In this document: positions 348 through 63,294 of the stretch, one piece after another
Layout: every line of letters begins with the position of its first letter
How positions within the stretch are numbered: the first letter of the stretch is position 1
Source: Phallusia mammillata
Lineage: Eukaryota
Length of the DNA: 64,000 nt
NCBI GenBank assembly: GCA_965637545.1
Contig: OZ281494.1
Span: 3,534,001 to 3,598,000 of the forward strand
Direction: 5' to 3'
Position numbers and translations under genes: made by a program
The notes under the pieces: generated by a model
Told to the model about the DNA's origin: nothing
What the model saw: the letters and a program-made list of their open reading frames with translations, nothing else
Database searches by the model: none

Positions 348-954
348 ATGGTATTTAAATATTATTAAGAACAATTTTTGGCAATAAGAAATGTGAAATG
401 CAAAATAGGTATTCAACATGAACAGTGACACTGCTGCTGGAAAGTTAGTAGTTAGATTGCCTTTTGGATAGAATGGAATTTCATGAAAATATTTCTGCTT
501 GAGCATCATACTAGAAATACTTGCTATTGATCAAAAGTTCTGAAAGTTAATTTTTAAAGAAGCGCGACATTGTTTTTTTTAATTCACATTTAATGCTGTT
601 CTTGCTGTTTAGGTCGAGAGAAACGAATTAGAAAAGTGTTACCTGGATGGATGGATTGCTTTCAAAATGGAAATTTTCTTTTGTACTTTTGTCTTTGTTG
701 TTTTTGGTGATCATACATGCGGGATTTTTGTTGAATATGTTTTCTTCATTTTGACATCTACTCTCGGTGTAAATATCCTGGACCAAATCTTCACACGTCG
801 TGGATGGCAACATTTACCAGAAAACGACCTACATCTTTTAACGCTGATTGGTGGTGCTCCAGTCACAGATTTTGCTATGAACAGTTACATCCGGCAACAC
901 CGTGGTAATGAGGGATATCAGAAAGTGTTTGTGGACCGTGATACTGTATTATGA
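348..954 (+). CDS. DUF1294/YsdA-like small membrane protein, paralog A; join(348..350,613..954), ~114 aa; C-terminus frameshifted relative to A'
   Basis: PENDLHLLTLIGGAP matches the DUF1294 core (IPExxLHxxxLxGG). ATG|gtattt donor at 351 and tgtttag acceptor at 611-612, phase 0, in frame with the ORF-track ORF. The 5' UTR and coding exon align to the 62644-63294 paralog. Confidence 0.75.
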
Positions 955-2145
955 ACTTATAAGCTGGTTGCGGAAATGAGATAATCACAATTTTGTTTGA
1001 TTTATGATTGTAACTACCATGGTATAACAGATATTCCTTTGCTTTCTCCTATTGTACATTTTGAGCACCAGGTAGTTGAATTCTATCGCACTTGTAACAT
1101 AATAGAAATTACAGAAAAACGTATGTAATGTATTATTATTTTGAGAGGCCACACATTTTTGGTGTGGAGGGGGGAGGAACAAAAGTGTTATGGCTCTATA
1201 CGGGCAAGTTCAAAACACCGAGCTCTGGGACCAAAATAGCACATTATGCAAATTGTGGAGGCATGACCCGATGACCCTATGAGCACCCGTGGCTACGTCA
1301 ATACAGGACGTTGTGACAGTGCTTCATTTATCTATCACGCGCAAAATCAGTTGGTGTTATCCAAAGGGTTGAGCTATTAAAGTATTGTTTAATCGATTTT
1401 TTTACACGTGAAAGGAAAGTTCGTGAAAGAAAAGAATAAAGAGTTTTACGTCGGATGGTTTAGCACGACATACCAATAATATAACAGTTAACATGCAAAG
1501 TAGTATTTCAGCAAAGTTGTCGAAAATTAGGCGTTAATACCAAGTTTTCATCCGGGGTCATTTTCAACACAGTAATGTGATTTTAATGTTTAGGAGTACA
1601 GGGTCAACTGACTACGACTAAGTTATATTTGCTAGTTTAAATGTCATAAAACTATGCGTTTTTTAGACAAAAACTAACTAACACGACACCCAAAGCGAAA
1701 ATATAAACCAACAATACAGTAGGTTTGAGTCTATATAATCATAATCAAATAAAAGCGAATGGTCAGACACAAACATTTAAAGGGAAAAACAAAACAACAG
1801 TTAAAGTAAGTTCACAATGGAGAGTAATGATATTGAAACCACAAATAAAGCCGCATCCTTTGTGTTCAGTTGAACAGTTGGTTATAAGAGTAAATATTGT
1901 TTTCCCAAATTGGGGAATCAGTTTCCAATTCGAACATTGAACGACTGAGAAACTTTTACATTTTTAACAAGTCTTAATCTTAAGAAAGGTGAGTTAGGGA
2001 ATAAAAATTGTTTATCATAATAACTTATAGGTTAGTTTGGTTTTTAAATTTGATATGATTTTTAAAACAATCAGTTTTGGTTGATTCTCAAGTTAGTCTT
2101 TGCAAGTTTGAACGTTTTTTATTTTTTTATTGTGTTTTCAGAACA

Positions 2146-2379
2146 ATGACATGCAACTTCCATGACGATCCGGGTACAACCATTTTAGCATTCATTGGTA
2201 TACTTGGTTGTTTTGTCAACACAGTAGCTTTTCTTTTCACATTTACTTCTCAAAATGGACGTCGGGGTTTTGGAACCCGCATGTATCTTGCGTTGGGTGG
2301 TTCAGCTGGAATATCAGCAGCAGAAAAGCTGAAGGCAATGGGTTGCAGAAATGTTAAAAACAAAAATGGTCCGATGTAG
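2146..2379 (+). CDS. Short divergent DUF1294-like membrane protein, paralog B (77 aa, MTCNFHDDPG...)
   Basis: VNTVAFLF...RR...LALGGSAGISAAEKL resembles the DUF1294 NxxAFxxY...LxLxGGxxG motif. Acceptor ttttcag ends 4 nt before the ATG, and a candidate 5'-UTR donor aag|gtgagt lies at 1989. Close paralog at 60982-61221. Confidence 0.6.
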   Translation: MTCNFHDDPGTTILAFIGILGCFVNTVAFLFTFTSQNGRRGFGTRMYLALGGSAGISAAEKLKAMGCRNVKNKNGPM

Positions 2380-2669
2380 CAAGATATATTTTGCTTTTGA
2401 TCCTTAATAGTGTTATAAAATAAGTTATTACCTAATAAACGTTCTGAACTAATATTTTATTATCCTTCTTATCATCATCATTTATTATTGCAGCTTTCAC
2501 GATATAACATTTGAACGCAAAATTTTAAAGGCAACGCTAATTTTTATTAATAAAATATGTAACACAACAGCTGCGCTTTACGTGCAACATAACATCTCTG
2601 AATTGGGGGATAGTCACAGCTGTAGCTCACGATCTAAGCTTATGATGCACATAAATGTGTGGCTACGGC

Positions 2670-3510
2670 CTGTACATCTAATGTTGCCCATCTAATGTGG
2701 TCCTCAGTGTACTTAGGGAAGTTGTAGGTATACCAAGACACATGAAAATACAGGCAATGTAACATAACTGTACGCCAGATTCATTTTTCTGGTCAACAAT
2801 ATTACCTCTACACTGCCCTCTTGTGGATTACTCGTTTATTCTCTATGTACAATAATGTCCGCATTGCTCCAAGCAAGTGTGTGACCCCACACGCACATCG
2901 AATGAGACTCACAGGTACTCAGTGGTTGGGGTAAGCTTGTGTGTATTTGCAGACACATAAAAATGCAACACAAAAACTGGTGTTTGGTTAAAACGTACAT
3001 CAGAGTAAGCAGGCCCAAAATTCGAGCACAAACCCGAATCCTATATTTTTTAAGAAGTTCCTTTAGTAGGCCCAACAGGCCTCACATAAAAATCCTACAA
3101 AATGTACTAAACTCTACAGAATATGATTGAAAACGGCGTTTTAGGGACGGTGGAAACTAAGTTCAGCAACTAGCTACTGAGTTGGGTAATTTTATCTAAA
3201 AAAAACGAACACCGAATTCAAAGTCAGACACCCACTCAAGCCCATTTGTTTAACAAGACCTAAGGCTGAACCCGACCCGAACCCGAAATGGACCCGAAAA
3301 GCCCTGCCCGACTTACAACAGGCGTGCACATCTAATGTTGCTTATAGTGTCTTTCGGTATACTTCAGAAGCTTGAGTGTATGCACAGACACGTGAAAATC
3401 GATTATGCACATGAACTGGCGTGTGGTATTTGCGTTGACATCTTATGTTGCTTACATTTGCTCCTCGGTACACTTAGATACGTTTAGGTGTGCCCAGGCA
3501 CCTAACAAAT
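2670..3510 (+). repeat. Degenerate ~90-100 bp repeat units (ACATCTAATGTTGC...) downstream of paralog B
   Basis: Related units near 2675, 2880-2980, 3328 and 3438. An inverted homolog lies at ~62150-62450. Confidence 0.55.
3150..3320 (+). mobile_element. Partial copy of the CAGAGTTGTAA-type hAT MITE (ACCCGAACCCG-rich)
   Basis: Ends in CCCGACTTACAAC like the full copy at 12505-12742. The left end is missing. Confidence 0.55.
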
Positions 3511-4408: not shown

Positions 4409-5517
4409 ATGGTATTTATTATTGTAACTTTGAAGTTGTTGTAAATTACAAAACGTTGGTATATTTAGCTATTGGGCAAAAATATGGAAAAACGGAACGT
4501 TCAAAAAGCAAATGTTATAGCAGAGGCTCGGATACACCTGCGGCCACGGTGGTATATAATGTCATAATGTCACCAGAAATTTTAAAGTAATAATGTCACC
4601 AGAATTATTCGTTGTGATGATTTAAAACAATGCACACCCTGCTCTGAAGTACAAACCCGGAACCGACCCAAAGGTTAGCCCTAAAGCGGGTGTTGAATTT
4701 CTTCTGGGTTAAGAAGCAAAACAAGAAAATATAACCTGCTTAAATCGGTCATAGTATTTCAGGCCTATGCAAGGCGTTTTACCGAATCAGCCGGTCTCTG
4801 ATTCGGTATAACGATTTTTATAGGGCTTGCGTACTATAATTTATCGATAAGTATGCCGCAATTGCTGGTCTGCATCGACGCTTCAGGACTGATCCCAGTA
4901 TGAATTTGTTCATCTTAGCTGCTTAAAACTAATTACAGCGAAAAAAAAATTACTTGTGATTTTACAAAGCTTATTTGAAAAATGATTATTTTCTGTGCAA
5001 CGACCTAGTTGTGTTTATTGTTTAGGAGTGGAGTAATTCCAACCGATATCATTCACGATTTGAGATGCAAGCTGCCAACAGGAAACGTTTAGACGAATGC
5101 TATGGCGCTGGAACTAAAGTGTTTACTCTTGAGTGTGTTTTATGCGTGATTATGTATTATGCTGTTGGTAAGTTTGCATGCATCGTATGCGCGGCATATT
5201 TTGTTGGTATTTTAAGTCTTACTTTGTTTTTAAATGTGTTTGACAAATGTCTTGCACGTAGTGGCTCCAGCGAGCGCATTCCAGAAGATATGCTGCATTT
5301 TTTCACACTGATTGGTGGTGCTCCGGCCACAGCATTATCCATGCATGATCCCATTCGACACAAATGCAGTAAAGTTTCATATCAAGAGACGTTTGTTTTT
5401 TGGGCATCTCTTTGTTACATTTTGCTGATGTCTTGTGCTGTCCTCACACTATTTTATAGACGAGAACTTCAAAATCTGATGGCAAAAGTAGAATGGCTAA
5501 AAGGGCGTATCAATTAA
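4409..5517 (+). CDS. DUF1294/YsdA-like membrane protein, paralog C; join(4409..4411,5026..5517), ~164 aa
   Basis: Best family match in the window: FDKCLARSGSSERIPEDMLHFFTLIGGAPATALSMHDPIRHKCSK against DUF1294 DKxxAxxxxWRIPExxLxxxxLxGGxxGxxxxMxxFRHKTxK. ATG|gtattt donor at 4412, tttattgtttag acceptor at 5024-5025, phase 0, open frame. Confidence 0.8.
4775..4813. repeat. Inverted repeat (16-bp arms, 15/16 paired, 7-nt loop) in the intron of paralog C
   Basis: CGTTTTACCGAATCAG-ccggtct-CTGATTCGGTATAACG. The left arm and loop recur at ~59410-59427. Confidence 0.7.
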
Positions 5518-7050: not shown

Positions 7051-7687
7051 AATTTTTCAGGTTGACGCTTTGAACATTTTGCCCTTTTATGCACGAACAT
7101 GGCGATCAACAGTGTGCACGAGTTTGACAAATCACGGACACATGTTTTCTTAAGTTGTACTAACTCTGTGAATTGTTTATGTACTAAAACACATGGATTT
7201 TCATTCAAATACCTTTTGTATTTTACGTCTTACTAGATGGCATCGTTGTATTGCCACCAGGTATAGTGTTTAGTCGACTAAAGCATTTAAATTAACAATT
7301 GTTAACAAACGTAGCATGAAGCATAAAGATTCCATTTTTTTTCGAGGTCTTGAGTTGTATATTTTTTAAAGACTAAATTTATAACACAAACATCGTTGAC
7401 TTGTCCAATGCTGACCAACATTTTTGTAAAAACATAGAGCTTTTTTTTTATTTTTCGTCTATGCCTTTGCTTACTGTGTTTAATGCAATGTTATCTGCGG
7501 TATGCGTTAACAGACTGGAAACGTATTTTGACCATGAATTTTGCTCTGTAAATACTCTTGACTTACATTCTTTATTCATTAAACGGGGGTAATGAAGGTA
7601 TGTTGCTTTTTATATTGGTAATTTCGTAGCAGTACAGCGTATCGGGGTAGCTGTTTTTGTTACCCTGAACAGCAAATCAACCTAGAA

Positions 7688-8038
7688 CAGTGGTTCTCAA
7701 ACTTTAAAACTGTCTCTTTGCCATTGGTTCGAGGGCTTGCGGTCCTTAATCCTGAATGTGTATTTTTAGAAAAAGCAAAATCGCGCATGACAATGATCCA
7801 ACGACCGATTGTGACACCACAGATAACACAAAAACATTACCATTGTATGCGAAAGGCTATTGTTTAGCAATAGAGACAGTCGATTCTCAATTATACTTTG
7901 ATTTAAACTGATTCAGTGGCACACACTGACGCCAAATAAGATTATAGAAGTACTTCAAACTTCAAACCTTTTCGCACCCCCCCCCCCCTCAAATTGCTTC
8001 ACGGACCCCATAAGGCCCGCGGAACCTAGTTTGAGAAC
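7688..8038 (+). mobile_element. hAT-type MITE (CAGTGGTTCTCAAA termini; right end eroded)
   Basis: Left TIR CAGTGGTTCTCAAACT and right AGTTTGAGAACC. CTAGAAC occurs at both ends, consistent with a TCTAGA-like Charlie target. Confidence 0.6.
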
Positions 8039-8529
8039 CTAGAACGTTATACAGCAGGCGCAATTAACTTGGTAAAACCATTTCAAGCAGAAGTACTGCG
8101 TCGCAAAATAAAATATACTTCACTGGGGTTAACGACTGAGCTGAGTTAAGGTAATGTAGACATTCCGACAAAGCATTTGACGAAACAAGCTTTACAGTTC
8201 TTCAGTCAATTTTCCGCGTGCAATACGAATTAAAGCCAGGACAAATTTGATCTTATTTTGGAAACAGAGTTAATAAATCTAGCAATTCTAAATGTATATT
8301 GATTTGCATTTATTATTTCAACTGTATATCACGAGATTTACACTGGAGTTGGACCGAACAAACGCGTAAACAAAGGAATAAAAATCTGCAAAACAGAATA
8401 TGCAACGTTACGTGGTTGTTTTCTTTGCTGACGAGACTAGTATATCAGTGTGTCTAATATGCAATGAAACACTAGCTAACAACAAAAAGTCGAATGTCAT
8501 AAGACTAAAAACGTTTTGCATTTTATTTT

Positions 8530-8624
8530 AAATTTTAAAACGGCTTTGTGGCTCCCAGTGTTTTTTTTTACTACGTGAAACTGGTCCGAGTGGCTCTTTG
8601 AGTAGTAAAGGTTGGCGACCCCTG
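8530..8624 (+). mobile_element. Right terminus of a Charlie/hAT-like MITE
   Basis: GTGGCTC motifs then GGTTGGCGACCCCTG, followed by TTCTAGGG. Confidence 0.45.
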
Positions 8625-9946
8625 TTCTAGGGTATCGCAACAAATACCAATGGCTATGCAAACGGCTAAAAGATTCTATCGCCTGACGTTTTTGACACAC
8701 TACTTTGCGAAGTTTATTGCAATATCTTCGTATGTTTGAGACGTTTGCTGTTTGCTTCTGGGAACATATGATACGTGTCGGAAATGATTTACCGAATCAG
8801 CAATATTCCCAACAGTTCAGTATGTAAGAATTACAAAACACAACAAAAATGTGTTTAACTTGTTAAGCAATGGCTACTTTGCGCTGCAAGTAATTGGACC
8901 TTAACTGAGGTTAGGATCTAATTTAAGCCAATACGAGGCTTTACAAACGGACACTAAACAATGCCTATTGCAAATCTGCACAAAAACATCTAAAAATCGC
9001 TACAAGCAACACACCTTAGATTCTTTCAAGTTGACCCAAGGAATTTCTTAACAAACGTATTTAGTATGTAGTTAATTACTTTTTGATAACAGTTTTGCCT
9101 TGTCCCATACAATACGGGCAGACCCAGATTGAAAGCTTTGTATCGGGCCAACCTTGATTTTTACGTCAAAAGTTTTCACAGCATTGCTGTTACATCGCAA
9201 TGTACCATATTTCAACACTTTGAAATTATTGTGATGCAACTACAATGAGATAAAGTATTTGTAAATCAATCACATTGTCAGGCATGGATTCGATGATAAG
9301 GCAAATGCCGAGTGTTAACTAATCTTAAAAAAGCAAAACCTTTTACCTAAAAATGGCAAAAAAAATCATGTGGCTTTTAGCAGAAAAAAAAAACATTTCA
9401 AGCCCGTACACAATATAACATCACAGTCAGCAGTTGGCTTTAAATAACGTTTGGTAAGATATCCATTATATAACGGTCAGAAACTAAAATCAAATGGTCT
9501 TAAATCAGCCCAAATGGAGATATGGGTTGATGTAAAGGACACACATGTATTTTGTTCGATTTTCAACCAAGGGAAAATGCTATTCAGATCAACCGGTAAT
9601 GACCCTCAAATTTATAAAATCACGTTCTAAGGACGCAATAATAGCATGAATCAAATTTCGGAATAGCAGTGTCATGCGGTTAAATAAATTTCCAAAGCCA
9701 TTTTGAAGATCGCATTTTGACCGAATGAACCCACGGCGCGGTTTAGCTATAGGTTGAGGCATTGTAATTCCATCGAAAGGGTAGTCTTGAAATAAAAACC
9801 ATTATCTATTCTTGTCGTGTTGCTGTCAGATTATTCTTAAAACAGCGGACATGGCAAAATTAAAAAAAATGTTGGTACTAAGAAACCTTTCATATCAATT
9901 TCATATAAATTTTTGTTCTGCGGTTTACATATATCCGTCAGGACTG

Positions 9947-10013
9947 TATATAAGAGTACCAACTGTGAGCTACAAATTACAAGCAGAAGAGTCATCAAAC
10001 AAAAGAATTTAAA
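9947..10013 (+). promoter_or_regulatory. Candidate TATA box and non-coding first exon of protease gene 1
   Basis: TATATAAG at 9947-9954, donor aaa|gtaagt at 10014, acceptor tttttag at 10432-10433, 14 nt before the ATG. Confidence 0.45.
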
Positions 10014-10447
10014 GTAAGTAAATTATTGCTTTATTGTTCTCGGATTAACGAAATAGTGTAATTTTGATTTATGGTCATGGTTCATATTACAGATTCTTTT
10101 GCAGAACCGTTAATTTTGATGGTTATGTAATTGCTGTACATAAATACCGCCAGGGTTTAAGACATAATGTCACCACTTTGTTATATTTTATCGAAAAGCC
10201 CTATTTGCTGCATGTTTGCATATTTTTTGTCATGCGTAATCAAATGAAAAAATGTTATTTGTGCAGTTCAGAAAACATGTTAACGTTACCCGTTCCTATT
10301 TGATTTAATTATTCTGGCGGCGCTGTTCAAGTAAAATAACTTTATCCACGAAACAATAGAAGAATACGATTTAGTGTTTTTTATTTACTGCAATATATTT
10401 TCATGAAATGCAAGTACTTCTGCTCATTTTTAGATATAACGTCCAAG

Positions 10448-13400
10448 ATGAAACTACAAACCATTACTTTAGTCTTGCCCTTCATTGTGGCTGTCAGTCA
10501 GTCCTTTCCCTATGAAAGCACGTATCTGAGGTGAGCATGTTACAAAACGGTTGTTTTTATCACTGATTATAACACAAGCATTTGCCGAACGTTATGTAAA
10601 TAAAGCATGTCGCTTTTTAAGTTTGTTTGGGTCGTTAATTTTCTCATTGAACTTATGAACATATCCGTGTATAGTGTTCCACGCTTGTGGTTTTATCGGA
10701 AAAAATATCTGATGCTATTTAGAAAAAGTGAAAGTTCAATACTGCAAAAATACCCATAAAACCACTCAATAACCATTTACATTTGTCAGGGACTTCCGTT
10801 CGTATATTTACAAGAACAAACGGTCTACTTGCCCAATAGGTGAGAAACTTTCCATTGTCGCCGACTATTTGTCTTACAAAGAAAATTAAAATCGCATGCT
10901 GACAAAATATAACAAAGGTTTTTAATTCAAAAACTTTTTTGTATAATTTCAAAAAGTAAATAATTTCTTCGGATGAAAGAAAATTTCAGTTAAAAGTATC
11001 ATAATACGGTACATCTAGGCGTCACAAGAATTTTAACATGGTAAGACGTAGGCTAGCAAAACCTAGCCTGCTGTGGATTTCGAACAGCACAGGATTCTTT
11101 CCGGCACTCGCAGTGTACCAAATGAGATACACAGGCCCAGAGCTTAGGGCGCCGAAAGTCGAATTACAAGAACTGTTTGCTTGCCCCGTATGCTGCAAAT
11201 TTTAGCTTTGTGTAGTAGGGGCTCGGCATGTTGACCAGTAATCGGTTAAAATGAACAGAAATTCATAACTGCGATCATCCTTGTTTATTGCGGCATTTTT
11301 AGTTAAAACAGGCATACCAACATCACTCAATTTGTTTTACTATTTAAAAATACAAGAATAGGGTCAAATGGTAGGAATAGTGTTAATAAAAGCCTAAAAG
11401 AACCTAGAACCATTTTCGTTGGATCAGAGCCATGTGTATCTGATATGCGAATAGACAGTCGCTCCACTAGGTGGGGTCCTTACCCTTTTGTCAGCCAAAC
11501 TCAAGGCTGCTAGCTACTTAGCATTGTAACCACGATCTATAATATGATTACGCTTTTAAAAGCCAAATCTCTCTGTTCAGACGTAAGCAAGTTATCCATT
11601 TAATTTGGTTTTTCAGATCCACCTAATTTTTTTTCCTAAAAATCGATACCCACCGCATAATCTTATAGAAGATAACAAGTTATTTTTCCTTAAAGGTTAC
11701 CTTCCGTCCACGCGCTTTACTGCAAGATATTTACAAGGTGCCACATCCAAATGCATATCCTGCGGACAGACCTGCTGCAAGAAAAAACAATACAGTGACG
11801 ATGAACAGTTTGCCAAGAGAATCAGTAAGTAATTCAGTTGGTTTACTGCTGCAAACCAAACAAACGGCATAAGATGTTTGACGGAACTTTTGAAAGGCAT
11901 TTGTCTCTTTGGCAACACCAGTAAAACGCAACATACAATAAAGCACCACTCTAATAAAGGGGTTGCCTAAATTTAAATTATTATCATATACATTGCAAGG
12001 TGAAGCTAAACATTTGCTCTCACAGCATTCAATTACATTTGTAATTGGTTTTTATTTCATGTTAAAACGCTTACGTTGTAAACAACCGCATTTCCAAATT
12101 CCCAACCTATTGTGCAGGAAATGGAAGAAAAACAAAAATAGGTCAGTTTCCATGGTCAGTAGCCATTTTTAAAAGATCTCCCATTGGTTGGAAATTTCAT
12201 TGCGGTGGAGTGTTGCTCAGTGACAACAAAATTGCTACCTCCGCTCATTGCATGTAAGTAACTGCAATTTGGTTAACACAATATAAGCTTAGTAATCATA
12301 CAGTTTGGTTGATGAACAAAAGCGGATTTATATTGTAATCTGAATTTGACTCGAAATTTCCGGCTCTTACGATGATATTCATGAACCTACTTAACATAGA
12401 AACACTAACTTGCAAAATGGATTGTACTTTTCGATACATTGTAGTTTTTATCTACCTTGTCTGTAGGATATTCAACGCTTCTGGGCTGTTGCCGATAATG
12501 AATACAGAGTTGTAAACGGTCCTGAAACTGCAACCCGACACGAACCCGAATGGTTTTCAGAAGGTCCGACATTAGGTCAGGACCAGCAACTGGCTACTTA
12601 GCTAGCTCAATTTATTAAAAAAAAATGCTGACACAACGTGTACATTCAGGCCCGAAACGAGTCCGTTTTTTTTAAGAAACCCTAGTCCAAACCCGGCCCT
12701 GATACCAGTCGGAACCCGAACTTGGCCCGACTTACAACTCTGAATCAATATATCTTGCCTGTAGGTTATGTTAATCCGAACATGAATATTAATAAAAGTA
12801 AACTTTTCACTGAATATTACTCATAAACAAAAGACAATGCTAACACGTTTTGCCGTCGTTTGATGCGCATTACGATGCACACAACAAAGATTGCAATATC
12901 AAAACAACAAAAGTACTTTTGGCACCAAATCAACTTTCTGCAAATTTTAATTTTAGCCCAGACGAAACGACGAACGATATCGACAACACCTTACGAGTAA
13001 CAATCGGGGAAAATAACATTCACGTGGATAGGGAAACAGGATTAAGAAAACGCAGATTACATCTTTTGAGGGATCTCAGTGTAGATGGTAGTCACATATT
13101 GGTGAAGCCTACGTTAAATCTACGTGGCAACAAAATCGGAAACATCAGAGGGTAATTAATGATTCATTATTACAAATAACAATTTGCTGGAGATGTACGC
13201 GTTTTGTATAAACGTTTGGTTCATTGAATTGCCCCTACATATTTAATGAAAATTAGATATCGCTTTACAAAATAAAAAAAATGGCAAAAAATAGTAAACT
13301 GTTTAGCACTTAAAAATACATTGAAACATTTGTCTCGTTATATGCAGCAGTCTTGTGTAACTAACGCGAAATAACGTTTGTAGGGATGATCTCGCCATAC

Positions 13401-23328: not shown

Positions 23329-23341
23329 TATTTCAAATAAA

Positions 23342-40945: not shown

Positions 40946-40954
40946 CGTGAAGTA

Positions 40955-52448: not shown

Positions 52449-55400
52449 CTAGAAACTTTCAATAAAATTACAGAACTTTCTGCTGACGGCCTGAAGCATT
52501 TTGTGTGGTGTTCCACTGAGTAAAAAGAATGTGGCGCGGACTAGACGAAAGTTCAGATGCAATGAAAATGACATGTGTTGATGTTATGTAATAATCCTAA
52601 TGCAAAAGAAAAAAGAAACTAACTATAAAACGTTTTAACCAGTTTCATTCAAGCAAGGTATTGTATTTGCACGGATTGAAGTTTTGTGGATACAATATGG
52701 CAAGGTGAATGCAAAATTGTGAAAAAGTGTCTTTAACATTCGGAAAAGGATAGTTCCTTGCCGGCTAAGCTATTTGCTGTAAAGGTAGCTGTTGCAAAGT
52801 AATACCAAACGCTATTAGCACTGCAAAAATAGCATGTTCTAAACCCTTAACAACATCATGCTTTTTGTTACATGTTTTGGTCAACGTCAGAAGCACACAA
52901 CCACGTATAAAGACTGGAGGTTGGACGTTCCTAAGTACTTTACTGAGTTCTTGTATTATAGTACTATGTGTCAAATTACTACTGTAAACGGCGTGTTGAC
53001 TGTTAATTTCATGTAATTTACATTGATAAGACAAATGTATTCATAAATTTAATATATTTTAATATTATAATGGGTCACTAGTTGACTATGATGGACGTGT
53101 TTGCAAATGTTTAATAAAATTCTTTTTTTGGCAAATTGCACGAATTTCACGCAATTTTAACTGACATTTACTTGTAGTGATCATCGTTTTCCTGGGTATT
53201 GCATGTTTAGAAGTGGCGGGATCTGTGGATGCAAAACAGAGGCGGTTTGCTGCAGCGCTTCATGAGAGCTTAAATATGTTGTGCAACACATACTCTGTAC
53301 GTATTATTACAACAGTTTTGTGAGTATTTTAACGTGTCCGTCTATTTTAATATGGATTTTTTTAAATTGTACCCTCAAAACGACAGTTTAAGTTTGAGAT
53401 TTTAGACATATAATTTTATCAGAGAAGTCAAAACCGCAATTTTTGTTCTTGAACAAATAGTACTGCCAAGGCAAAGTTAATGACTTAAATCGCACTTTTC
53501 ACATAAATACAAAATAAAAACATTTTTATGTAGGTCGAATCTCAAGCTGTTTGCAAGTCTGTTTCACAATTGAATTGGATTCCACATCCAAGAAATATTA
53601 GAGACGTAGGTTTCTCGTTGTCCATTTGTATTAAAACAATACTCTGACGATTGTTTGTTTAGATGAAGTGCGACTCAAATCGTATGCAACCGGTAATTGA
53701 AAAATTACGTCAAACATGCGTTAAAATTTGCCAAATCAAGGCTTCACGAGTCCCACCCCAGGACAGCATTTTAAGGTATGCAGGCAAAATTAGATACTAA
53801 AACAAAAATTTTATTTTATTTAATTATTTCTAAAACTATTTTATTTTTGGCCGACCCTGGCAACGTAAAATCTAAAATCCGCAATGAAAAAAGATATTAT
53901 ATGTTTTTGAATAAATATTCCTATGGGTTACATATATTATGTAGAACAACTTATGTTATCTTACCCTAATTTGTAAACTTTTAATTTAGATATATACATT
54001 TTTTATCACACCTTTAGAACAACCCACCTTGCATTCTGGGCCAACATTACAATGGTTTGCGAACATCATCTTTCCCCCAATGTCATTCAATTTTGCTTGG
54101 TAAGAGCATCTCAAGATGCAACCAGTGTTTAAGGATCACAATTTGTTTCTGAAAAAATGAATTTATTTAGAAAAACGAAACGGAATTGCACTGCGACCAA
54201 CTGGCAACGAATGGCACTCGTAGAAACGATGAAATAGCTTTGGTGGGTTTCGATTAAATGGAGTATGTATGAGTTGTAGTGTGTTTAAACTCTTTCGTGG
54301 CGTCGATATTTAGAGAACGTGCGTCCTTCTTTACCCCAAGCGGCTATATTTAGACGGAAAATAAAATCGCCATAACAACGAGAACACAAACTGTAACCGC
54401 ACAAAACTGCCTTTAGTGAAATGCAATTGGATAGAAAACAAATTCTCCTGCAAAAAAAGAAATGAAATTTACTAAAAAAAGTAGGCATTTTTGCCCTTTT
54501 TACCTGTAGCGCTATTAACACAGGAACTCAAAGTACGCCGGTTTGGCAATTTCTGATAAGTGGTTCAACGAAGCATAGGTGTATACTATACTTTGACAAT
54601 AATTGCTGAGTCAGCATTTTGCTAAATTCTATGTTTATACCTCTACCATTTTTAACATGTCATTTGCAATCCAGCCAGTAAAACGCCCTAAAATTAGGTT
54701 ATAAGTATTTCATTTTCAACCACACCTCAAAGTAGACATTTTGCCATAAGCAAACTAAAATTGCCTGCTGAGTTTGCGATTTGTGTGTATATTTAGATTT
54801 TCCTAGAATTTTGTTTATAATTCTCAGGAAGAAGTTCAACCAGTTCTACAGAAGACTGTTCAACTCATTCATAAAATTCAGTGTCTTTCCCTGACATTCA
54901 GCCACCAGCGTGCAAACCGTCGACAACAACCAATTTGGAACTGAAAACAACCAAATTAATTTACAAAAGCCTGCTATTGCTTTGTTAATACGCTTGTGCT
55001 TTTTCATGGCATAGCCATACCGTATCATTAAAATAAAAAAGTAACGCTATTAAACGAAAGAAACATACAATTACAAATGACTGTATAAAAACGTCGCCAA
55101 ACAAACAAGCTAACACCTTTCAAATGACAGCGACATACCAAATATTTGCTTGACCTAATGTTGGGTCGTGCTCGTTACACAAAGCATGCTTCAAATGCAG
55201 CCTTGTAACTTGCCATGCTTCTTTGCTTTCTGCGTATAGTTGCACAGAAAATTATTCATTGCTCATCAAAAAGTGAAGAGTAAATCTGAATCAAGAATTT
55301 GTTGTGACTAATTTTCAAAATTAATTCCAAGCCACAAAATGAAGTTGTTTTCTCATCTAAATTATAATTTGTCACAAGCTTGGTATTTCCGTAAATACAA

Positions 55401-57361
55401 CATGTGCTGTGTTTTGTGTCAAATACCGTATTGGGACTTTTTAGGTATAAGTAAACCGCTCGTTCTTTTACAATGTATTGCAATGCGTAATGTCATCACA
55501 TTAAATGCATAATATTAACATAAAAGTAAACTTAATAAACTGATGTTGCAATGGACATGTCCGAGAAATTCCTGACGTCTGGTAACCATATGGTGTAAAT
55601 TAAATGAGGCTTTAAAAATGTCAACAAAAACCAGATTTACAAAGCAGTCATCAGGCCTATGGCCAAAATCCATAGAAAACACAAGTTGTGGGGATGAAAA
55701 TGGGCGAAATTAGCGCGAATTTTGCATTGCGCCTTATGGGGCCGATTTATAAAATGATTAATTTGGATACTTTTGCGGTGTTTGATTTTGCAATTTCTGC
55801 AAAATTTTGAATAAAAATATAACTACGCTTAACTTATAATGTTTAAATGGAACTGATGAACATGAAATAGAGTTTAAATTAGGTTTTAGCGGGTAAATTT
55901 TCCAGTAGATATACATGTAGCCTACTTAAGTCCCGAAAGATAAAAAGGTTGTGATGTATATTCATCTAAAATTGGAATAAATAGTTTGACCAAGGTCCTC
56001 TAAGGTCAGAAAAGTCATGACGTAATAGTGACGTCATCGTTTATTTACTGCATTTTGACGCTTTTAGCACATACTGAATTTTGAAAGCTTTTGGTACTAC
56101 CTTTGAAGGTGTTGCACAATCTTTCCCTCTTTTTTTAATTTTTTTGAAAGATATTTCACACTTTTTAGTGATAAAAATATTTATTGCATTAATTAAGGTC
56201 TATATACCATGTTGAATATGTGTACTGTCATATGCAACACAACCACAAGAAAAAATGCAATATAAACAAATACAACTAACATTGATGCATAAAACAACCA
56301 ATATCAACAAAATTGTTAAATCTTCTTGAATCTATTCACCTGTACAGCACAAAAAGTCTCGTGGGAAATTTTGCATCCAAAGTGGCACTTTTTTCATTTA
56401 TTTCAGTTTCAGCTGATACTTCCCACAATACATGTTATGTGAGGATATCACAAAAAATCCAAATGATTTCATTAAGGGCATAAAATAACATGCAAGAATT
56501 ATTAGCATTTTTCAAAATTGGTGATTCCATAAAATCAAAAAAGTCAAAAGTCAAAAAAAAGAGACACACTGCACAGTATGACATGTTTTTTTAAAGCTTC
56601 ATAAACTCAAACACAGTAGTTACATGAAGTCCAATAAATCCTGTGTCAGCCTTCTAAATGTCACAAAATTACATGTAAATCAATGAATGTTATTTGCCTT
56701 TCCATCTTGTTATGCATTACTATTTTATGTCATTATTTGTGTCTGTTTTAATCAAAATTGTTGCAAAATAAAACATTGGCATTTATGTTTTACTTTTTTC
56801 TGAGTCTATATGCCTGTTGGTATTGCAAGCCAGGAGCCATGCCAAACAGCAACTTCTTACACAGGTTTGGTGCCATGGGACACTAGATAATTCTTCTTCA
56901 GTAAGGATACTTTGAAATCAACGGCTTGTTCTTTTAAAAGCCCACCCATCCACCAGTTTCTTCATTATATTGGTGCACTTAACTGGCCACCAAACCACTT
57001 TTTTTACTATTTTAAGTTGCAAGTTTATATATATGAACACTTTATTCATCTTATCATAGAACTGTTAAATGTATTGCAAATTTATGTAGGTTTGCACTTT
57101 TTCCAGTAGCAAAAAAATAAGTATACCGTTAACCTAAATAAAGACTTTAAAAAGTATAACTTTGATAAACAAACTGCTTTGGTTAACACTTATATTTCTA
57201 AGTTTTTGAAATATCTGTACAATCAACATTTTTTATTACTAAAAACGGTCGGGATCATTTATATTTACTACACTTTATTCACAAATTTGCTAGCAAACGA
57301 TGCAGAAAATTTTTTTCGCTAAACTCGTGCCAATAAAACTGCTTTCCTGCAAACATTGTGC

Positions 57362-57385
57362 GTTGCCTGGCAACCAATGACGTCA
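57362..57385. promoter_or_regulatory. Composite RFX X-box / CCAAT / CRE element
   Basis: GTTGCCTGGCAAC (57362-57374), CCAAT (57374-57378) and TGACGTCA (57378-57385) overlap in tandem within a locally CpG-richer stretch. Confidence 0.5.
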
Positions 57386-58550
57386 TTTTTACGTCACGCA
57401 TAAATTTTCTTGTCAGCAAGGCAATTTAGAAATAAAAAATATTTAGTCGTTAAGCCAGGTTATTGAAAAAAACATCCAAAACCCTATCCTTTGCGTTGTT
57501 AAAAGCGTGCAAAGTCGCCCCTTTTCACGCTCCATGAATTCTCGTGCGACAACTTGTGTTTGATAGATAGACTTTGGCTATGGCGACACCAAAGTTTCGA
57601 ACATGGGTAATTCCCAAGTGCGCAAGACGAGTTTCTTTCCAGGCAATAGAAAATAGCTGAAGCGTTAACTCGTTTCATTGAAATGATTAGAATTTTTTGT
57701 TTTGGCCGTCCGACTGAACAATTCTTATCATAGTTGTTATCGCTTTAGTGAATAAGAACGATCTCAAATTGAGTTCTGAATAATACATGTAACAGAACTG
57801 ATATATAATTATTTCCTGTGATATGCTCTCTATAAATATATGTTACAAACAGTTTGTGCTGTTTAACGAAGTTATGACCATAACACAGTGATTCTTAAAC
57901 TGTGTGCTGCAGAATATTCGAGTACATGTCTCATTTCATGTCATTGCAGGGGTGACTGTTTGTGAGTGTGCATGACGATCTTATAAAACTATTTTTAAGA
58001 GTTTGCTTCTAAAAACAAACTCATACATCGCATCGCAGTGGCAAAGAATTTTTGTAAACAATGATTATGACGTCAGTGGCGAATCAAGCAGAAACTTTTT
58101 AAAAAGGCAGGGTTTTGTTTGTACTTTTATTATTTTGGGGAGGGGGTGGAAGAGGTGTGAGTTATGGGGTCGAATACGAGCTTCACACAATTAGAAGGGG
58201 AGCCTTTAAGCTACTTCACTGCTTGGGGTTGTGACACTTCTTAATTCATTTGTTGTTGATTGTGTACAATTGAATAAATCGGTTGCTGTTATAGTTATAC
58301 AGATCTTCAAGCCTGGTCAAATCAGTGGTTCTTAACTTTGTTAAATTAGCAAAACATCAGGATTGTAGGCACCACTTTAAAATTCCTCATGTGCTCTCTT
58401 CTTTAAGCAATAGTTTAATTTTAGTATGATTTTTTAAAGGTGTACAAGTTAATTTAGGATCTTGCATATGTGTAAAATTACCAACTTTTCTACTCATCTT
58501 GTACAGACCCAAAATACTTTTTTTGCTTTATAATACTGAAGGTAATTCAA

Positions 58551-59288
58551 ATGGTAAGTGATACGCAAAACGAAGGCTAGCTTTTTACTTATTGACAAAT
58601 GTTTTAGCTCAGACAACTTGTTATCTGTAATTGTCTCAGAGAAATAAACTCGTACCACGTATATGATCAGATAGGTTCCTATCGTGGGTTTGAGCTAGAT
58701 TTTTTTAACCTATCTCTTATTATATGGGAATTATTGATATTTTTGATAACACTTTATGTATGTACCATGTCATCATTAATTTGTATTACGCTTAATTTTG
58801 GTCAATCATGGGTTACTTATGACATAATATTCGTTCAGAAATGGAAACGACGCAAAAGTAAATCCTATTTCAATCGCTTGGATGGAAAAGAAGATCTGCA
58901 TGAATGTTTTAAATACGGAACAGTTGTACTTGTATTTGAAATAATTATTTGCGTTTTAAACTACTTGTTCGGATTCCGAGCGTATGTGCTACTGTATTTT
59001 GTTGTTGTTTTGATTTTTACTTTTTTCTTAAATCTTGCAGACAAGTGCATTGCTTGCAACTATTGTTGTCATTCCTGTTGGCAAGTGCCAGAAAAGGTGT
59101 TGCACTTTTTCACACTGATTGATAGGGCACCTTCAACTGCTCTTGCGATGCACGATCGTTGTTTTCGACATAAATGCAGTAAACTGGAGTATCAGGTTGT
59201 TTTTGTAAAAGTTGCAAAACTATGTGTTTGCGTTTTGTGCAGTGTAATTATGATGTTTATCTTGTGTTTTTATTTGAGTAATCGTTGA
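58551..59288 (+). CDS. DUF1294/YsdA-like membrane protein, paralog C'; join(58551..58553,58839..59288), ~150 aa
   Basis: ADKCIAC...WQVPEKVLHFFTLIDRAPSTALAMHDRCFRHKCSK. ATG|gtaagt at 58554, ttcgttcag acceptor at 58837-58838, phase 0. The exon starts KW, like EW in paralog C. The ORF-track start at 58734 probably lies in the intron. Confidence 0.75.
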
Positions 59289-60981
59289 AAACACCAATAA
59301 AGCTTATTTCTACGAAACTGACTTGGTCTAATACGAAGATAATTTTTAATTTACCCGCTTTGTTGATGCAACCGAAGCACCATAGTACGCCAGGCCCATT
59401 GAAGGCGCCATACCGAATCAGCCGGTCACCAAGCATTCACCACCATATGGCAAGGCGTAGGCTAGAAAAATATATCGAACGGCGATGTGGTCTATTAGAT
59501 TTTCTTTTGGGAATTTAGCGCCCACCAAAAATGGTTTACATCTGTGTTTACCAATCAAAGCAGCAACTTTAGAATTTGTAGAATTACCCACTTACAGCAA
59601 AGGCGAAATCAGTCAGGCGTGGAGGGTAGCTAAGGAAAGCGCAAACACCTGAAAAGTCCCGCGCTCGAAACCGTGGTATGATGGTTGCCACAAGAATGAT
59701 ATTAGCTTTTTAGCAAAGAAACATCTACTTGGGGCCGACACTTGTTCATAATCTGCTGCAACACGATGTGATAGTCTAGTTTACAGTACTATATTAACAA
59801 ACTTTTGTAAACGTATTTTTTTCGTAAGGTCACAAACATATTTTTCCTGTTACGTTCACATAAAAAACCACCAATCAAAAACATGCTTATTTGTGATCCA
59901 AACAACATTAAAGTAATGGATCAAACCCACAATCATCAGGGCTTCAACTGAAGATCACTATACTTTACTTTTTTAACTATGAAACAGTAACCGACGACTA
60001 AATCATTAAATAGAACAGAATCGGTCAGTTTTAGGTAAGTTAACATATATTTTGCCTACATATACTATACACCTAGATTTTAGATAGATTTCCCCTAGAT
60101 AGATTCTTTCCTTGGATAACTATAACTTGTGTTTTGTAACATGTACGTCATTCCAACACGTGATAGGAGAAACATTTGCATTCCTACGTTACCCACCGCG
60201 CGTCGTTTTAATTTTCGCGCAATCTACTAAAATGTTCTGTGTTTGTTAAAAATGTGCCACGCCAACAATAAACTAACATAAAAACACTGATACTTATTGT
60301 GAATCTATACGAACAAGAGACAATGCTAATGAGAATAAAATATTATAGGTTTATTTTATAAATTGTGTTGACTGATTTTAAAACACAGCTGCAGATTGCA
60401 ATGCTCCATCGCTGTTGTTAAAATACAACCACAAATTCATAATCTAGTACGGATTAGAACTAACACACAAAAAAACATATAGCCAGTCACTCCAGTTTGT
60501 GGTGAGCAACAGGGTACAACCCCATACATCACCCAGTCTGTGCGATGCCACAACTGGGCATACAGCACAAATGAAACTGGCTCACAGTGGCCAAGCAACT
60601 GCTTGGGAACCACAGTGAAGTCGGCTTAGTGTCACAGTATCAATGTAAAAGCAAGTAAATATTGTTTTCCCAAATTGCTTTTACAGAGTAAATATTGTTT
60701 TCCCAAATTGGAGAACCAGTTTCCAATTGAGGTCTGAACACTGAACAACTGAGAGGTTTGGACAATTTCAACAGGTATTTACGAAGGCAAATCTACAATA
60801 AAGGTACGTGAACTCAGCTCAAAATTGTACTTGGTTTATGTAATCTACAGTTTGTATAGGTTTTTAATTGTAGCTAAGTTTAAAATTAATTTTGACATAC
60901 ATTTTTTGGTTGGTGCTCAAATGAGTCTTCACAAGTTTGAAAGTTTTTTATTAATATTGCATACTTTGTGTTTTCAGAACA

Positions 60982-61221
60982 ATGTCGTGCAACTTCACTG
61001 ACGATCCGGCTCCAATTATTTTAGCATTCATTGGGATATTTTGTTGTTTTGTCAACGCAACAGCCTTTCTTTTCACACTTCGCAGCAACACTCCACAAAA
61101 TGAACGTCGGAGTTTTGGAATCCGTGTGTATCGTGTACTGGGTGGATCTGGAATAGCAGCGGCAGAAATGCTGAAGGCAATGGGTTGCAGAAATGTTGAA
61201 AACAAAAATGGCCAAATGTAG
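60982..61221 (+). CDS. Short divergent DUF1294-like membrane protein, paralog B' (79 aa)
   Basis: Close paralog of 2146-2379, with the same ttttcag|aacaATG junction and homologous upstream (TAAATATTGTTTTCCCAAATTGG) and downstream flanks. Confidence 0.6.
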   Translation: MSCNFTDDPAPIILAFIGIFCCFVNATAFLFTLRSNTPQNERRSFGIRVYRVLGGSGIAAAEMLKAMGCRNVENKNGQM

Positions 61222-62149
61222 CAAGATAAATTTTGCTTTTGATCCTTCGTAGTGGTATAAAATATTACCTAATAAACGTTGTGAAATGCTCAATTGTAAT
61301 GTATGGTTTAAATTTGGTCATAAACTATAATTTTATCGAGTTTAGCTTTTTAAGTTGGGTTGGGTTTTATTTCGCTCGGTAAAAACATCGCAGTAACACA
61401 ATTGCACTAAAATATTCATCTTGCCAGAGATAGCTGCGCAACGTTGAGACGTCAGAGAGCTCGACAAAGTAGAGGGTATAGTTGGTGGGGATATGGTAAA
61501 CGCGCTGCAGCTACACCGTTATTATAAGCGTTATGTTGCGGGGAGGATTTTGCGTTGAGTTGAACAACATTAATTCACAACTACAAAATAGCAGAGAAGG
61601 TAAACCATTTTTATTGTCAACATTGAGGGCTTTGTTTCGACGTTGGACAAAAGCATTCGTTACCAGAAGCTCAGCGCGAAAGAATCATGTTTCCATTGAA
61701 TGTACATTGCACAATCAGGTGGTGTATATATATTTTCACAAAGGCGTCAGTCTTCTTCAGAAGGCGTCAGTCTTCTTTGGCGCGGTGTTAATAGAAAATT
61801 ATATACACAACAACTTTCCCAGAGAAAGTTTTTGCCTATCATCTATCGATTTTGCATCAAACCATGTCTAAACATTATTTTTTGTCAAAACAAATTCGGC
61901 AGTTAAAGTGTTTGTTTATGGCGCAACTGAAACAAAATAACACAAAAGACGGGAGTGAAGGAGTGAAGCGTATCAGAAACAACCAGTCAGTCCGGCGTTA
62001 AGCTGAGAGGGAAAATCTTTTTAACGGGACTATAGTTCCCACTGTCACGTGACCGAAACAAAAAATGGCAATTTTTATCTCAAAAACCAGTCTTACGTAA
62101 ATCTTTGTTGGTGCTTTCGGAGGCCACGTTAACTCAAAGCTATGCATGG

Positions 62150-62450
62150 ACGTGTGGTGTTTGTTTCGCTTTAATTAAAGAACAAGCTCACTGAGAACCA
62201 CTGTAAGCAACATGTGCATGCTGTGAAAACACATAAGTTCGTGTGCAGCATAGATTTTTATGTATCTGGACATACACACAAGTCTCCTTAGTACACTGAG
62301 AAACACTGTAGGCCAAATTAGATGTGTACGTTGTTACACAAACTATCTGTGGTCACACACTAGCTTGGAGCAACACGGACATTATTGTGCACAGGAAATA
62401 AACGCGCATTCCGCAAGAGGGCAGTGTAGAGGGAATATTGTTGACCGGAA
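62150..62450 (-). repeat. Inverted homolog of the 2670-3510 repeat block
   Basis: The reverse complement contains ACAATAATGTCCG..TTGCTCCAAGC.AGTGTGTGACC and ACATCTAAT, as at 2830-2980. Confidence 0.6.
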
Positions 62451-62643
62451 AACCTTTAAAGAAACTGACGTTGAGGTATGTTACGTTTGCCTGAATATTC
62501 GTGTGCGTGTAATTTTTATTATTTAACTTGTGCGATTGCGTTAAAATATATGATTTATAACATGTACAATAGTGAGAAGCAAAGGAATATCTGTTATATC
62601 GTGGCAGCTACAATTATAAATAATGCTAAATATTGTTAGCATC

Positions 62644-63294
62644 CTACTTCAGCAACTGGTTTAAAAGCCTATAAAACAGTGCGAGGGCTGTACATCTTCC
62701 CAGCAAACGACAAGAGAAAATAGCACGTTCCATGAACACTTTCTGATATGCCTCGTTACTACGGTTTTGCCGGATGTAGTTGTTCATAGCAAAAGCTGTA
62801 GCTGGTGCACCACCAATCAGTGTGAAAAGGTGAAGATGATCTTGTGTCCAACATTTCCAGCCAAAATTTTGGTCCCACACATTTACACCGAGAGTAACGA
62901 TCAAAATGATCACAAAATATCGAACAAAAATCACGCATGTAGCTTCACCAAAAACAGAAAACACACAAATACAAACAACAATTTCTATGATGAAGACAGC
63001 GAGTCCTGTCAGGTAACACTGTTTCAATTGGTTTCTCTGATCCTAAACAATAAAAACGAAATAAATGTCTATGCTAGAAATTTTGTATTACGTTGTCAAG
63101 CTTCTTTAAAATTAACTTTCAGAGCTTTTAATCAATAGCAAGTATGACTAGTATGATTCATTCAAGAAGAAATATTTTAAAAAATAGACAATCAAAGTAC
63201 CAACTTTTCATCATAGGTGTCATTTATGTTAGGCCTAAATACCTATTTTTTATTTTTTGCCAAACCTAAATTAAGAATTTTGAATAGCTACCAT
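62644..63294 (-). CDS. DUF1294/YsdA-like membrane protein, paralog A'; complement(join(62644..63042,63292..63294)), ~133 aa
   Basis: HLHLFTLIGGAPATAFAMNNYIRQ. Minus-strand ATG|gtagc donor and tgtttag acceptor, phase 0. The 5' UTR aligns to that of paralog A. Confidence 0.75.

What the first reader, a model, noticed from the sequence alone, without database searches (positions are those of the whole stretch)
348..63294. Six-member, intron-containing DUF1294/YsdA-like gene family in an animal genome
Seen: six small Cys-rich hydrophobic proteins in three subtypes (A/A', B/B', C/C'). A, A', C and C' carry the ExxLHxxxLIGG-type core, and C/C' also carry DK...RHK; B and B' are short divergent forms. 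All have eukaryotic splice signals. Established: DUF1294 (Bacillus YsdA-like) is a family of unknown function described mainly from bacteria and archaea, often fused to a cold-shock domain. Inference: this may be a horizontally acquired or rarely retained membrane-protein family that gained introns, expanded and diverged into three classes in this lineage. It is the strongest candidate here for an undescribed system, for example a hetero-oligomeric membrane complex.
Basis: partly seen in the sequence, partly recalled or inferred. Interest (0 to 1): 0.78.

Follow-up and report, generated by a model that had tools for sequence, protein, structure and literature searches.

The report
Tunicate DUF1294 membrane-protein gene array
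The six small genes are real, but they are a sample of a much larger tandem array of about 30-45 DUF1294-family membrane-protein genes in what looks like a tunicate genome; relatives exist in Ciona, there is no sign of recent transfer from bacteria, and the function is still unknown.

Summary
All six ORFs are at the stated places. A, A', C and C' are relatives of DUF1294 (PF06961). C and C' pass Pfam's cut-off. A and A' are joined through clear paralogy to C (BLASTP 1e-29). B and B' belong to a separate family of 11 short genes found only in or beside this array. Their link to DUF1294 is only suggestive (hhalign E 0.003).

"Six-member" is an effect of the window. The genome has at least 31 Pfam-level matches and about 45 ORF pieces in C1:3.52-3.80 Mb. 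First readers of neighbouring windows already noted this array.

Nearly every copy has a first coding exon that is only ATG, followed by GT, with the ORF starting right after a TTTAG acceptor. Likely RNA contigs cover gene A only.

The genome carries a cellulose-synthase match beside a GH6 match, which marks tunicates. The only named close relatives are from Ciona intestinalis and C. savignyi. In two trees all eukaryote-like sequences separate from the bacterial-like ones (support 97 and 92). This argues against a recent transfer. An ancient transfer or patchy retention stays open.

Window 7,083-64,000 is about 99% identical to a block about 120 kb downstream, so it is either a recent duplication or a retained haplotype. 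The assembly gap touches no gene. I found no support for an A/B/C complex.

The parts
348..350 (+). Gene A: start codon, the last three bases of exon 1, followed by the GT donor at 351
   Evidence: Sequence. An ATG|GTA with similar context lies 100-790 nt upstream of nearly every array copy.
351..612 (+). Gene A: phase-0 intron (GT...TTTAG)
   Evidence: Sequence. The ORF opens exactly after the acceptor, whose TAG is an in-frame stop.
613..954 (+). Gene A: exon 2 coding part with stop. A-type DUF1294 paralog, cut short at the C-terminus by a 41-nt deletion relative to A'
   Evidence: Pfam 17.1 bits. Own-family HMM 169.9 bits. Deletion shown.
699..1071 (+). Stretch of gene A (coding end plus 3' UTR) covered by contigs of two likely RNA runs with no mismatches
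   Evidence: records 1 and 17. The rest of the 5.3 kb laid stretch is uncovered except for two short repeats.
1878..1988 (+). Gene B: likely non-coding first exon, conserved with B', ending at an AAG|GTGAGT donor
   Evidence: 75% identity with the B' upstream region; sequence. No RNA support.
2146..2379 (+). Gene B: coding sequence of 77 aa; the ATG lies 4 nt after the acceptor at 2141
   Evidence: No Pfam hit.
4409..4411 (+). Gene C: ATG-only coding part of exon 1; intron 4412-5025
5026..5517 (+). Gene C: exon 2 coding part with stop. It has the full DUF1294 motif set
   Evidence: Pfam 41.1 bits. AF2 model pLDDT 81.9. Best structural match is a bacterial DUF1294 model.
58551..58553 (+). Gene C': candidate ATG-only first coding exon (AAATG|GTAAGT)
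58839..59288 (+). Gene C': exon 2 in the short model (acceptor TTCGTTCAG ending at 58838). An in-frame alternative acceptor at 58607 would add 77 residues. The GG of the core reads DR
   Evidence: Pfam 25.5 bits. Which acceptor is used is not known.
60982..61221 (+). Gene B': coding sequence of 79 aa; acceptor ends at 60977
62644..63042 (-). Gene A': exon 2 coding part with stop; full-length A type
   Evidence: BLASTP to C 1e-29.
63292..63294 (-). Gene A': ATG-only coding part of exon 1; intron 63043-63291
50190..52448 (.). Microsatellite (TTTCTTGA) x 222, followed by the assembly gap 51965-52448. Intergenic
   Evidence: No family ORF lies within 6 kb.
7083..64000 (.). Part of the window that is 97-99.7% identical to a block about 117-133 kb downstream on the same contig. 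It contains C', B' and A', but not A, B or C

Best explanation
The six genes are a sample of a large tandem array on contig C1 (about 3.50-3.80 Mb) of a tunicate-like genome. The array encodes small Cys-rich integral membrane proteins of the DUF1294 (YsdA) family.

Shown:
- A, A', C and C' are paralogs of one family.
- The predicted fold is two N-terminal helices, a short helix-GG-helix hairpin and a last long helix. Residues 49-141 of the model superpose on a bacterial DUF1294 model.
- All array subtypes share a gene structure with an ATG-only first coding exon, which points to one founder gene.
- Copies evolve under moderate constraint (dN/dS 0.16-0.67), and several are broken.
- Named relatives occur in two Ciona species.
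- Eukaryote-like and bacterial-like sequences split cleanly in the trees.

Inferred:
- The array arose by repeated tandem and segmental duplication within a tunicate lineage, from a gene older than this species. It is not a recent bacterial import.
- B-type genes are most likely a cut-down, fast-evolving offshoot of the same family (about 55%). They keep one membrane helix and the LGGxPG hairpin.
- Mechanism (about 35%): the conserved polar residues are N..DK at the end of helix 2, R-I/V-P-E, LH, GGAP and RHK. They would lie at the cytoplasmic face of the membrane and form a small binding or catalytic pocket. Two membrane helices separate the positively charged N-terminus from this pocket, and the outward-facing loops are only 2-3 residues long.
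- The juxtamembrane Cys clusters are candidates for acylation or metal binding.
- Copies that lost DK/RHK (A type) or GG (C') would be inactive or regulatory variants.
For: - Family membership.
- Size and layout of the array.
- Conserved ATG|GT ... TTTAG|GA structure.
- A transcript-like contig from a related species reads M directly followed by the conserved N-terminal region.
- Expression of A.
- Constraint.
- Fold and match to a bacterial DUF1294 model (TM 0.69 by that model, rmsd 2.6 over 92 residues).
- Tunicate signature: Cellulose_synt and GH6 matches 2.8 kb apart on one strand. That this pairing marks tunicates is established knowledge, restated in PMC13390645 and PMC10334666.
- Ciona relatives.
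- Split from bacterial-like sequences, including the cold-shock-domain fusions: SH-like 97, SH-aLRT 92.
- B genes occur only in or next to the array: 11 of 11.
- B aligns on the GG hairpin.
Against: - Only two of the six genes pass Pfam's cut-off on their own.
- B and B' have no significant link to any family. The hhalign probability is 10.6%.
- RNA support covers one exon of one gene. The runs are only guessed to be RNA, and no splice junction was seen.
- Most close relatives are unnamed contigs, so the range of the eukaryote-like clade among animals is unknown.
- The trees rest on about 110-135 columns and on the 150 hits most similar to the query.
- Copy number may be inflated by a retained haplotype.
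- No experiment on any DUF1294 protein was found. The mechanism is inference from motif position only.
Confidence: 0.72

Rival explanations
1. Ancient horizontal transfer: a bacterial DUF1294 gene entered the tunicate stem lineage, as cellulose synthase did. It then gained an extra N-terminal helix and introns, and expanded.
For: - The only named members of the eukaryote-like clade are tunicates.
- The family is overwhelmingly bacterial.
- A published screen for transferred genes in Ciona used an E-value threshold of 1e-25, which proteins this short could not reach, so its silence is uninformative.
- DUF1294 was listed among candidate transferred genes in Dictyostelium.
Against: - Pfam counts report DUF1294 in gene models of five medusozoan cnidarians.
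- An Atlas cluster is half eukaryotic, mostly Mucoromycota.
- The clade does not nest within a bacterial group in the sample of 150.
- Unnamed relatives only 31-49% identical to any copy here lie on long eukaryote-like contigs whose organisms are unknown.
Confidence: 0.3
2. Recent horizontal acquisition by this species or genus, or bacterial contamination of the assembly.
For: The family is mainly bacterial.
Against: - The genes lie on a 36-Mb contig among retrotransposons and animal-type genes.
- They have introns.
- They have relatives in Ciona and in a related species' run at 71-79% nucleotide identity.
- They sit on the far side of a long branch from the bacterial-like sequences.
Confidence: 0.03
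3. A, B and C types are subunits of one hetero-oligomeric membrane complex.
For: - B genes occur only in or beside the array.
- A-B-C and C'-B'-A' neighbourhoods occur twice in the window.
Against: - The counts do not match: 11 B genes against about 45 DUF1294 pieces.
- Five B genes sit together at the left edge, without A or C beside them.
- There is no fixed A-B-C unit along the array.
- Co-expression was not seen: only A had contigs.
Confidence: 0.1
4. Much of what is seen is decay and assembly redundancy. Several of the six are expressed pseudogenes or allelic copies, not distinct working genes.
For: - A lost its last helix through a 41-nt deletion. A second A-type copy is cut short by a different lesion.
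- C' lost the GG motif, while its 99% twin keeps one G.
- Many array copies are split by stops or frameshifts.
- Window 7,083-64,000 is 97-99.7% identical to a downstream block, a level that would fit two haplotypes.
Against: - dN/dS is below 1 for nearly all pairs.
- Most copies keep open frames and splice signals.
- The two blocks differ by insertions, including an extra B copy. This fits either reading.
Confidence: 0.35

Closest known systems
DUF1294 / YsdA family (Pfam PF06961), bacterial and archaeal small membrane proteins, often fused to a cold-shock domain
   Same: C and C' pass the Pfam cut-off. The motif order is shared: DK, R-I/V-P-E, LH, GG-x-P, RHK. The model of C superposes on a bacterial DUF1294 model over its whole 92 residues.
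   Different: The proteins here have an extra N-terminal membrane helix with a conserved C-Y..G lead-in. They have no cold-shock domain. They hold several times more cysteine. Their genes have introns and form a large array. No function is known for either group.
Ciona intestinalis LOC113474161 (XP_026689846.1) and Ciona savignyi H2ZMI3 / H2ZMI4, uncharacterized proteins
   Same: They fall in the same eukaryote-like clade and share the four-helix layout.
   Different: They are only about 29-53% identical to copies here. The Ciona intestinalis model holds two domains in one 287-aa protein. No large array has been reported for Ciona. They group with the non-array type, though that placement is weakly resolved.
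Array-type transcripts or contigs of a related species (run DRR090687: P0001 and P0021)
   Same: They are the best hits (E 4e-43 for P0001) and fall inside the array subclade. They share the CC.CC cluster before R-V-P-E.
   Different: Nucleotide identity is 71-79%, so this is another species. In P0021's contig the ATG lies just after an acceptor-like site rather than before the intron.

Membership tests
DUF1294 (PF06961) | Score at or above Pfam's gathering cut-off of 25 bits | tested here: met
   C 41.1 bits and C' 25.5 bits. Not met by A (17.1 bits) or A' (no hit) on their own.
DUF1294 (PF06961) | Homology of A and A' to a member that passes the cut-off | tested here: met
   A' against C: 41% identity over 128 residues, E 1e-29. 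A and A' score 169.9 and 216.1 bits on the family HMM built here, though they were among its four training sequences.
DUF1294 (PF06961) | Conserved polar motifs DK, R-I/V-P-E, GG, RHK | tested here: inconclusive
   All are present in C. C' lacks GG (it reads DR). A and A' have DQ, altered RIPE, and RQH or RQN.
DUF1294 (PF06961) | Fold: membrane helix, helix-GG-helix hairpin, membrane helix | tested here: met
   AF2 model of C, pLDDT 81.9. Atlas best match is a bacterial DUF1294 cluster: TM 0.69 by that model, rmsd 2.6 over 92 residues. Both sides are predictions. No solved structure matches.
DUF1294 (PF06961), for B and B' | Any significant sequence or profile match to the family | tested here: inconclusive
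   No Pfam hit up to E 10 for 10 B-type members. No BLASTP alignment. hhalign of the B profile against the DUF1294 profile: E 0.0029, probability 10.6%, 24 columns on the GG hairpin. The AF2 model of B has low confidence, pLDDT 59.
Horizontally transferred gene | Recipient sequences nest within a donor clade | tested here: not met
   Eukaryote-like and bacterial-like sequences fall on opposite sides of one branch: 97 SH-like, 92 SH-aLRT. The sample is limited to the 150 best hits, most of them unnamed.
Horizontally transferred gene | Absence from sister lineages of the recipient | not testable with these tools
   Named close relatives are only from Ciona. Published Pfam counts list cnidarian members. 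No labelled animal-wide protein set could be searched.
Tunicate genome | Cellulose synthase gene joined to a GH6 domain | tested here: met
   PF03552 at C3:28483830-28484297 and PF01341 at C3:28480812-28481030, same strand. These are exon-level scores only (29.2 and 26.7 bits).

The most novel reading that the evidence does not exclude
The array is a rapidly diversifying tunicate-specific set of Cys-rich membrane proteins. It would have been built on a domain once acquired from bacteria. Degenerate A-type and cut-down B-type copies would act as partners or regulators of the intact C-type copies. The system would serve a tunicate-specific cell function, for example metal handling in blood cells or a membrane step in the immune-type gene neighbourhood where it sits.
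Probability: 0.1. Interest if true: 0.75.

Novelty: new variant of a known kind. Interest (0 to 1): 0.45.

Why it matters
DUF1294 is a large, widespread family with no known function. I found no study of it in animals. A genome in which it has grown to dozens of tandem copies gives natural variation to work with: intact forms, forms without the motifs, and truncated forms. Because relatives exist in the experimentally tractable Ciona, the function of the domain can be tested there. It also adds a candidate to the short list of tunicate genes whose origin, by transfer or by patchy retention, is worth resolving.

Tried and rejected
- Word-based protein searches with C alone, with the array profile and with a 40-sequence eukaryote-like profile gave no named relatives.
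- Foldseek against the PDB gave nothing at E 0.001 or better.
- The complex prediction of C with B gave 'no answer'. It is not evidence for or against binding.
- B-type proteins gave no Pfam hit, no Atlas hit and no BLASTP alignment to an array copy.
- The 2026 survey of transferred genes in Ciona (PMC13390645) does not list this family. Its supplements are not held.
- Searches for YsdA, PF06961 and IPR010718 found no functional study.
I therefore did not read the copies on C4 and C7, the array beyond 3.778 Mb, or the second C1:4.97 Mb copy in full.
- I considered that the acceptor at each ORF start could be a trans-splice site. I rejected this because the conserved N-terminal coding region would then lack a start codon, and a conserved ATG|GT lies upstream of nearly every copy.
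Full report
**The observation**

The window is G000:C1:3534001-3598000 of a 240-Mb assembly. All six ORFs are present at the places given:

| Gene | Coding part | Strand |
|---|---|---|
| A | 613-954 | + |
| B | 2146-2379 | + |
| C | 5026-5517 | + |
| C' | ends at 59288 | + |
| B' | 60982-61221 | + |
| A' | 62644-63042 | - |

Against Pfam, C scores 41.1 bits and C' 25.5 bits on DUF1294, whose cut-off is 25. A scores 17.1 bits. A', B and B' score nothing. A' is nevertheless 41% identical to C over 128 residues (E 1e-29). A and A' therefore belong to the family by paralogy.

The core LH...LIGGAP is present in A, A' and C. C' reads LIDRAP. DK and RHK are kept in C and C' but have changed to DQ and RQH or RQN in A and A'.

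Cysteine makes up 2.7-9.4% of the six proteins. The median is 0.9% in bacterial-like relatives.

**The assembly gap**

The gap (51965-52448) directly follows 222 copies of an 8-base unit at 50190-51963. It is intergenic, and the nearest family gene starts about 6 kb away. Sequence on both sides of the gap is collinear with a near-identical block further along the contig. This supports the order of the two flanks.

**Size of the family**

Six is not the size of the family.

- A six-frame search of the genome with PF06961 gave 31 matches over the cut-off. Of these, 26 lie in C1:3.524-3.797 Mb. The rest lie at C1:4.955 and 4.975 Mb, on C7 and on C4.
- An HMM built from the four window proteins found 45 ORF pieces in the 264 kb I could read. 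Several are split by stops or frameshifts.
- Subtypes do not repeat as A-B-C units. At least eight subtypes are interspersed.
- First readers of neighbouring windows noted the same array.

**A large near-identical block**

Window 7,083-64,000 is 97-99.7% identical to a block about 117-133 kb downstream. C', B' and A' therefore have near-identical twins, while A, B and C do not. This is either a very recent duplication of about 100 kb or a second haplotype kept in the assembly. I could not measure read depth to decide. Counted once, the array has roughly 30 genes.

**Gene structure**

In nearly every copy the ORF opens immediately after a pyrimidine-rich TTTAG acceptor, usually with a Asp or Glu codon. 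An ATG|GTA with a conserved context lies 100-790 nt upstream. The first coding exon is therefore the start codon alone.

| Gene | ATG | Intron |
|---|---|---|
| A | 348-350 | 351-612 |
| C | 4409-4411 | 4412-5025 |
| A' | 63292-63294 (minus strand) | 63043-63291 |
| C' | 58551-58553 | two in-frame acceptors possible (exon 2 from 58608 or 58839) |

For C', the shorter model matches the length of the other copies. Which acceptor is used is unknown.

B-type genes differ. A conserved non-coding first exon ends at a GTGAGT donor, and the ATG lies 4 nt after the acceptor.

A 918-nt transcript-like contig from a related species (run DRR090687) reads M followed directly by the conserved N-terminal region. 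This fits the model.

**Expression**

Contigs of four runs of the same species label were laid on 300-5600. Two runs gave contigs of 320 and 318 nt with no mismatch over 699-1071, the end of gene A and its 3' UTR. Apart from two short repeats, nothing else was covered.

The runs are only guessed to be RNA. The empty intergenic DNA beside the covered exon speaks for RNA. No junction was seen, and B and C had no contigs.

The covered transcript encodes the shortened A. Gene A lacks 41 nt relative to A' and loses the last helix. Another A-type copy is truncated by a different lesion.

**Constraint**

Pairwise dN/dS is 0.16-0.67 for most pairs, including A/A' at 0.52 and B/B' at 0.48. This fits a fast-evolving family that is still under constraint.

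**Fold**

The AlphaFold2 model of C (pLDDT 81.9) has helices at 5-46, 49-78, 87-97, 99-106 and 117-162. The best match among ESM Atlas models is a 92-residue bacterial DUF1294 protein. It aligns over its whole length to residues 49-141 (TM 0.69 by that model, rmsd 2.6). The proteins here therefore add one N-terminal membrane helix and a C-terminal helix to the bacterial core. No solved structure matches.

**B-type genes**

- The genome holds 11 of them, all between C1:3.499 and 3.717 Mb. Five form a cluster at the left edge of the array.
- They have no Pfam, Atlas or BLASTP link to anything.
- A profile of ten B proteins aligns with the DUF1294 profile only on the GG hairpin (24 columns, E 0.0029, probability 10.6%).
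- The model of B has low confidence.

I read B as a probable cut-down offshoot (about 55%), but this is not shown.

**Organism**

A Cellulose_synt match and a GH6 match lie 2.8 kb apart on one strand of C3. A cellulose synthase joined to GH6 is known only from tunicates among animals. This is established knowledge, restated in PMC13390645 and PMC10334666. The scores are exon-level and modest, so I call the genome tunicate-like.

**Relatives and origin**

The exhaustive profile search found 2885 proteins at E 0.001 or better, and 79 at 1e-10 or better.

- The best hits share the four-helix layout.
- Of the 30 top hits looked up, the named ones were Ciona intestinalis XP_026689846.1 and Ciona savignyi H2ZMI3; 28 carried no name.
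- Three of the unnamed hits were traced to contigs of 0.9-2.2 Mb with sparse genes and hAT or ZBED-type elements; others lie on contigs from 1 kb to about 1.7 Mb.
- These are only 31-49% identical to any copy here.
- From about rank 34 the hits look bacterial, including cold-shock-domain fusions.

In a FastTree tree of 170 rows, all own copies, Ciona and 42 other eukaryote-like rows lie on one side of a branch (SH-like 97). In that tree the array copies plus two proteins from run DRR090687 form one subclade (support 88). An IQ-TREE mixture-model tree of 99 rows keeps the bacterial-like rows on one side (SH-aLRT 92), but the array copies do not form a single group there. The place of the non-array copy at C1:4.955 Mb is unstable between the two trees.

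From the literature:
- DUF1294 is counted in gene models of five medusozoan cnidarians (PMC7642931).
- It is listed among candidate transferred genes in Dictyostelium (PMC3188802).
- An Atlas cluster is half eukaryotic, mostly Mucoromycota.

A recent transfer is therefore very unlikely. An ancient one, or patchy retention, cannot be told apart with unlabelled sequences.

**How it may work**

No functional study of DUF1294 was found, so what follows is inference.

- The N-terminus is positively charged, and two membrane helices precede the DK...RIPE loop. In bacterial fusions the cytoplasmic cold-shock domain is likewise followed by two helices.
- This places the DK, RIPE, LH, GGAP and RHK residues at the cytoplasmic face, around a hairpin that dips into the membrane.
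- Outward-facing loops are 2-3 residues long, so a role as a surface receptor is unlikely.
- I favour a small cytoplasm-facing binding or catalytic pocket (about 35%). The Cys clusters would be acylation or metal sites.
- Copies lacking the motifs would be inactive or regulatory.

The proposed A/B/C complex has no support. The single complex job gave no verdict.

**Verdict**

This is a new variant of a known but uncharacterized family: a eukaryote-type, Cys-rich, intron-bearing DUF1294 expanded into a large array in a tunicate-like genome. Interest is moderate.

Noticed in passing
window 7083-64000 and G000:C1:3658368-3765977: A block of about 100 kb is repeated in direct orientation at 97-99.7% identity, with indels including an extra B-type copy. 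It is either a very recent segmental duplication or a retained haplotype.
   Followed up: partly
window 50190-51963: An 8-base microsatellite (TTTCTTGA) of about 222 copies runs straight into the assembly gap.
   Followed up: yes
window 24244-26919 and 35255-38629: Two long open reading frames of Ty3/Gypsy-type retrotransposons. Both have reverse transcriptase, RNase H and integrase; the second also has an aspartyl protease.
   Followed up: partly
window 31350-31592 and 32453-32683: Two exon-like ORFs with LCCL domains (Pfam 27.7 and 48.7 bits). They probably belong to one multi-exon gene between the protease genes and the second retrotransposon.
   Followed up: no
window 3632-3687 and 4829-4905: Two short repeats are present at high depth in contigs of all four likely RNA runs, with unrelated flanks. 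They are probably pieces of a dispersed, transcribed repeat family.
   Followed up: no
G000:C1:3499401-3511759: A cluster of five B-type short genes, two of them with an internal stop, lies just left of the first DUF1294 copy.
   Followed up: partly
G000:C3:28480812-28484297: Cellulose synthase and GH6 matches lie side by side on one strand. This is the tunicate cellulose synthase signature. A second Cellulose_synt match lies at C6:17812787.
   Followed up: partly
G000:C1:4955103 and 4975129; C4:13407204 and 13441051; C7:22506114: DUF1294 copies lie outside the array. The C1:4.955 Mb copy has its ATG within the single coding exon, unlike the array copies.
   Followed up: partly
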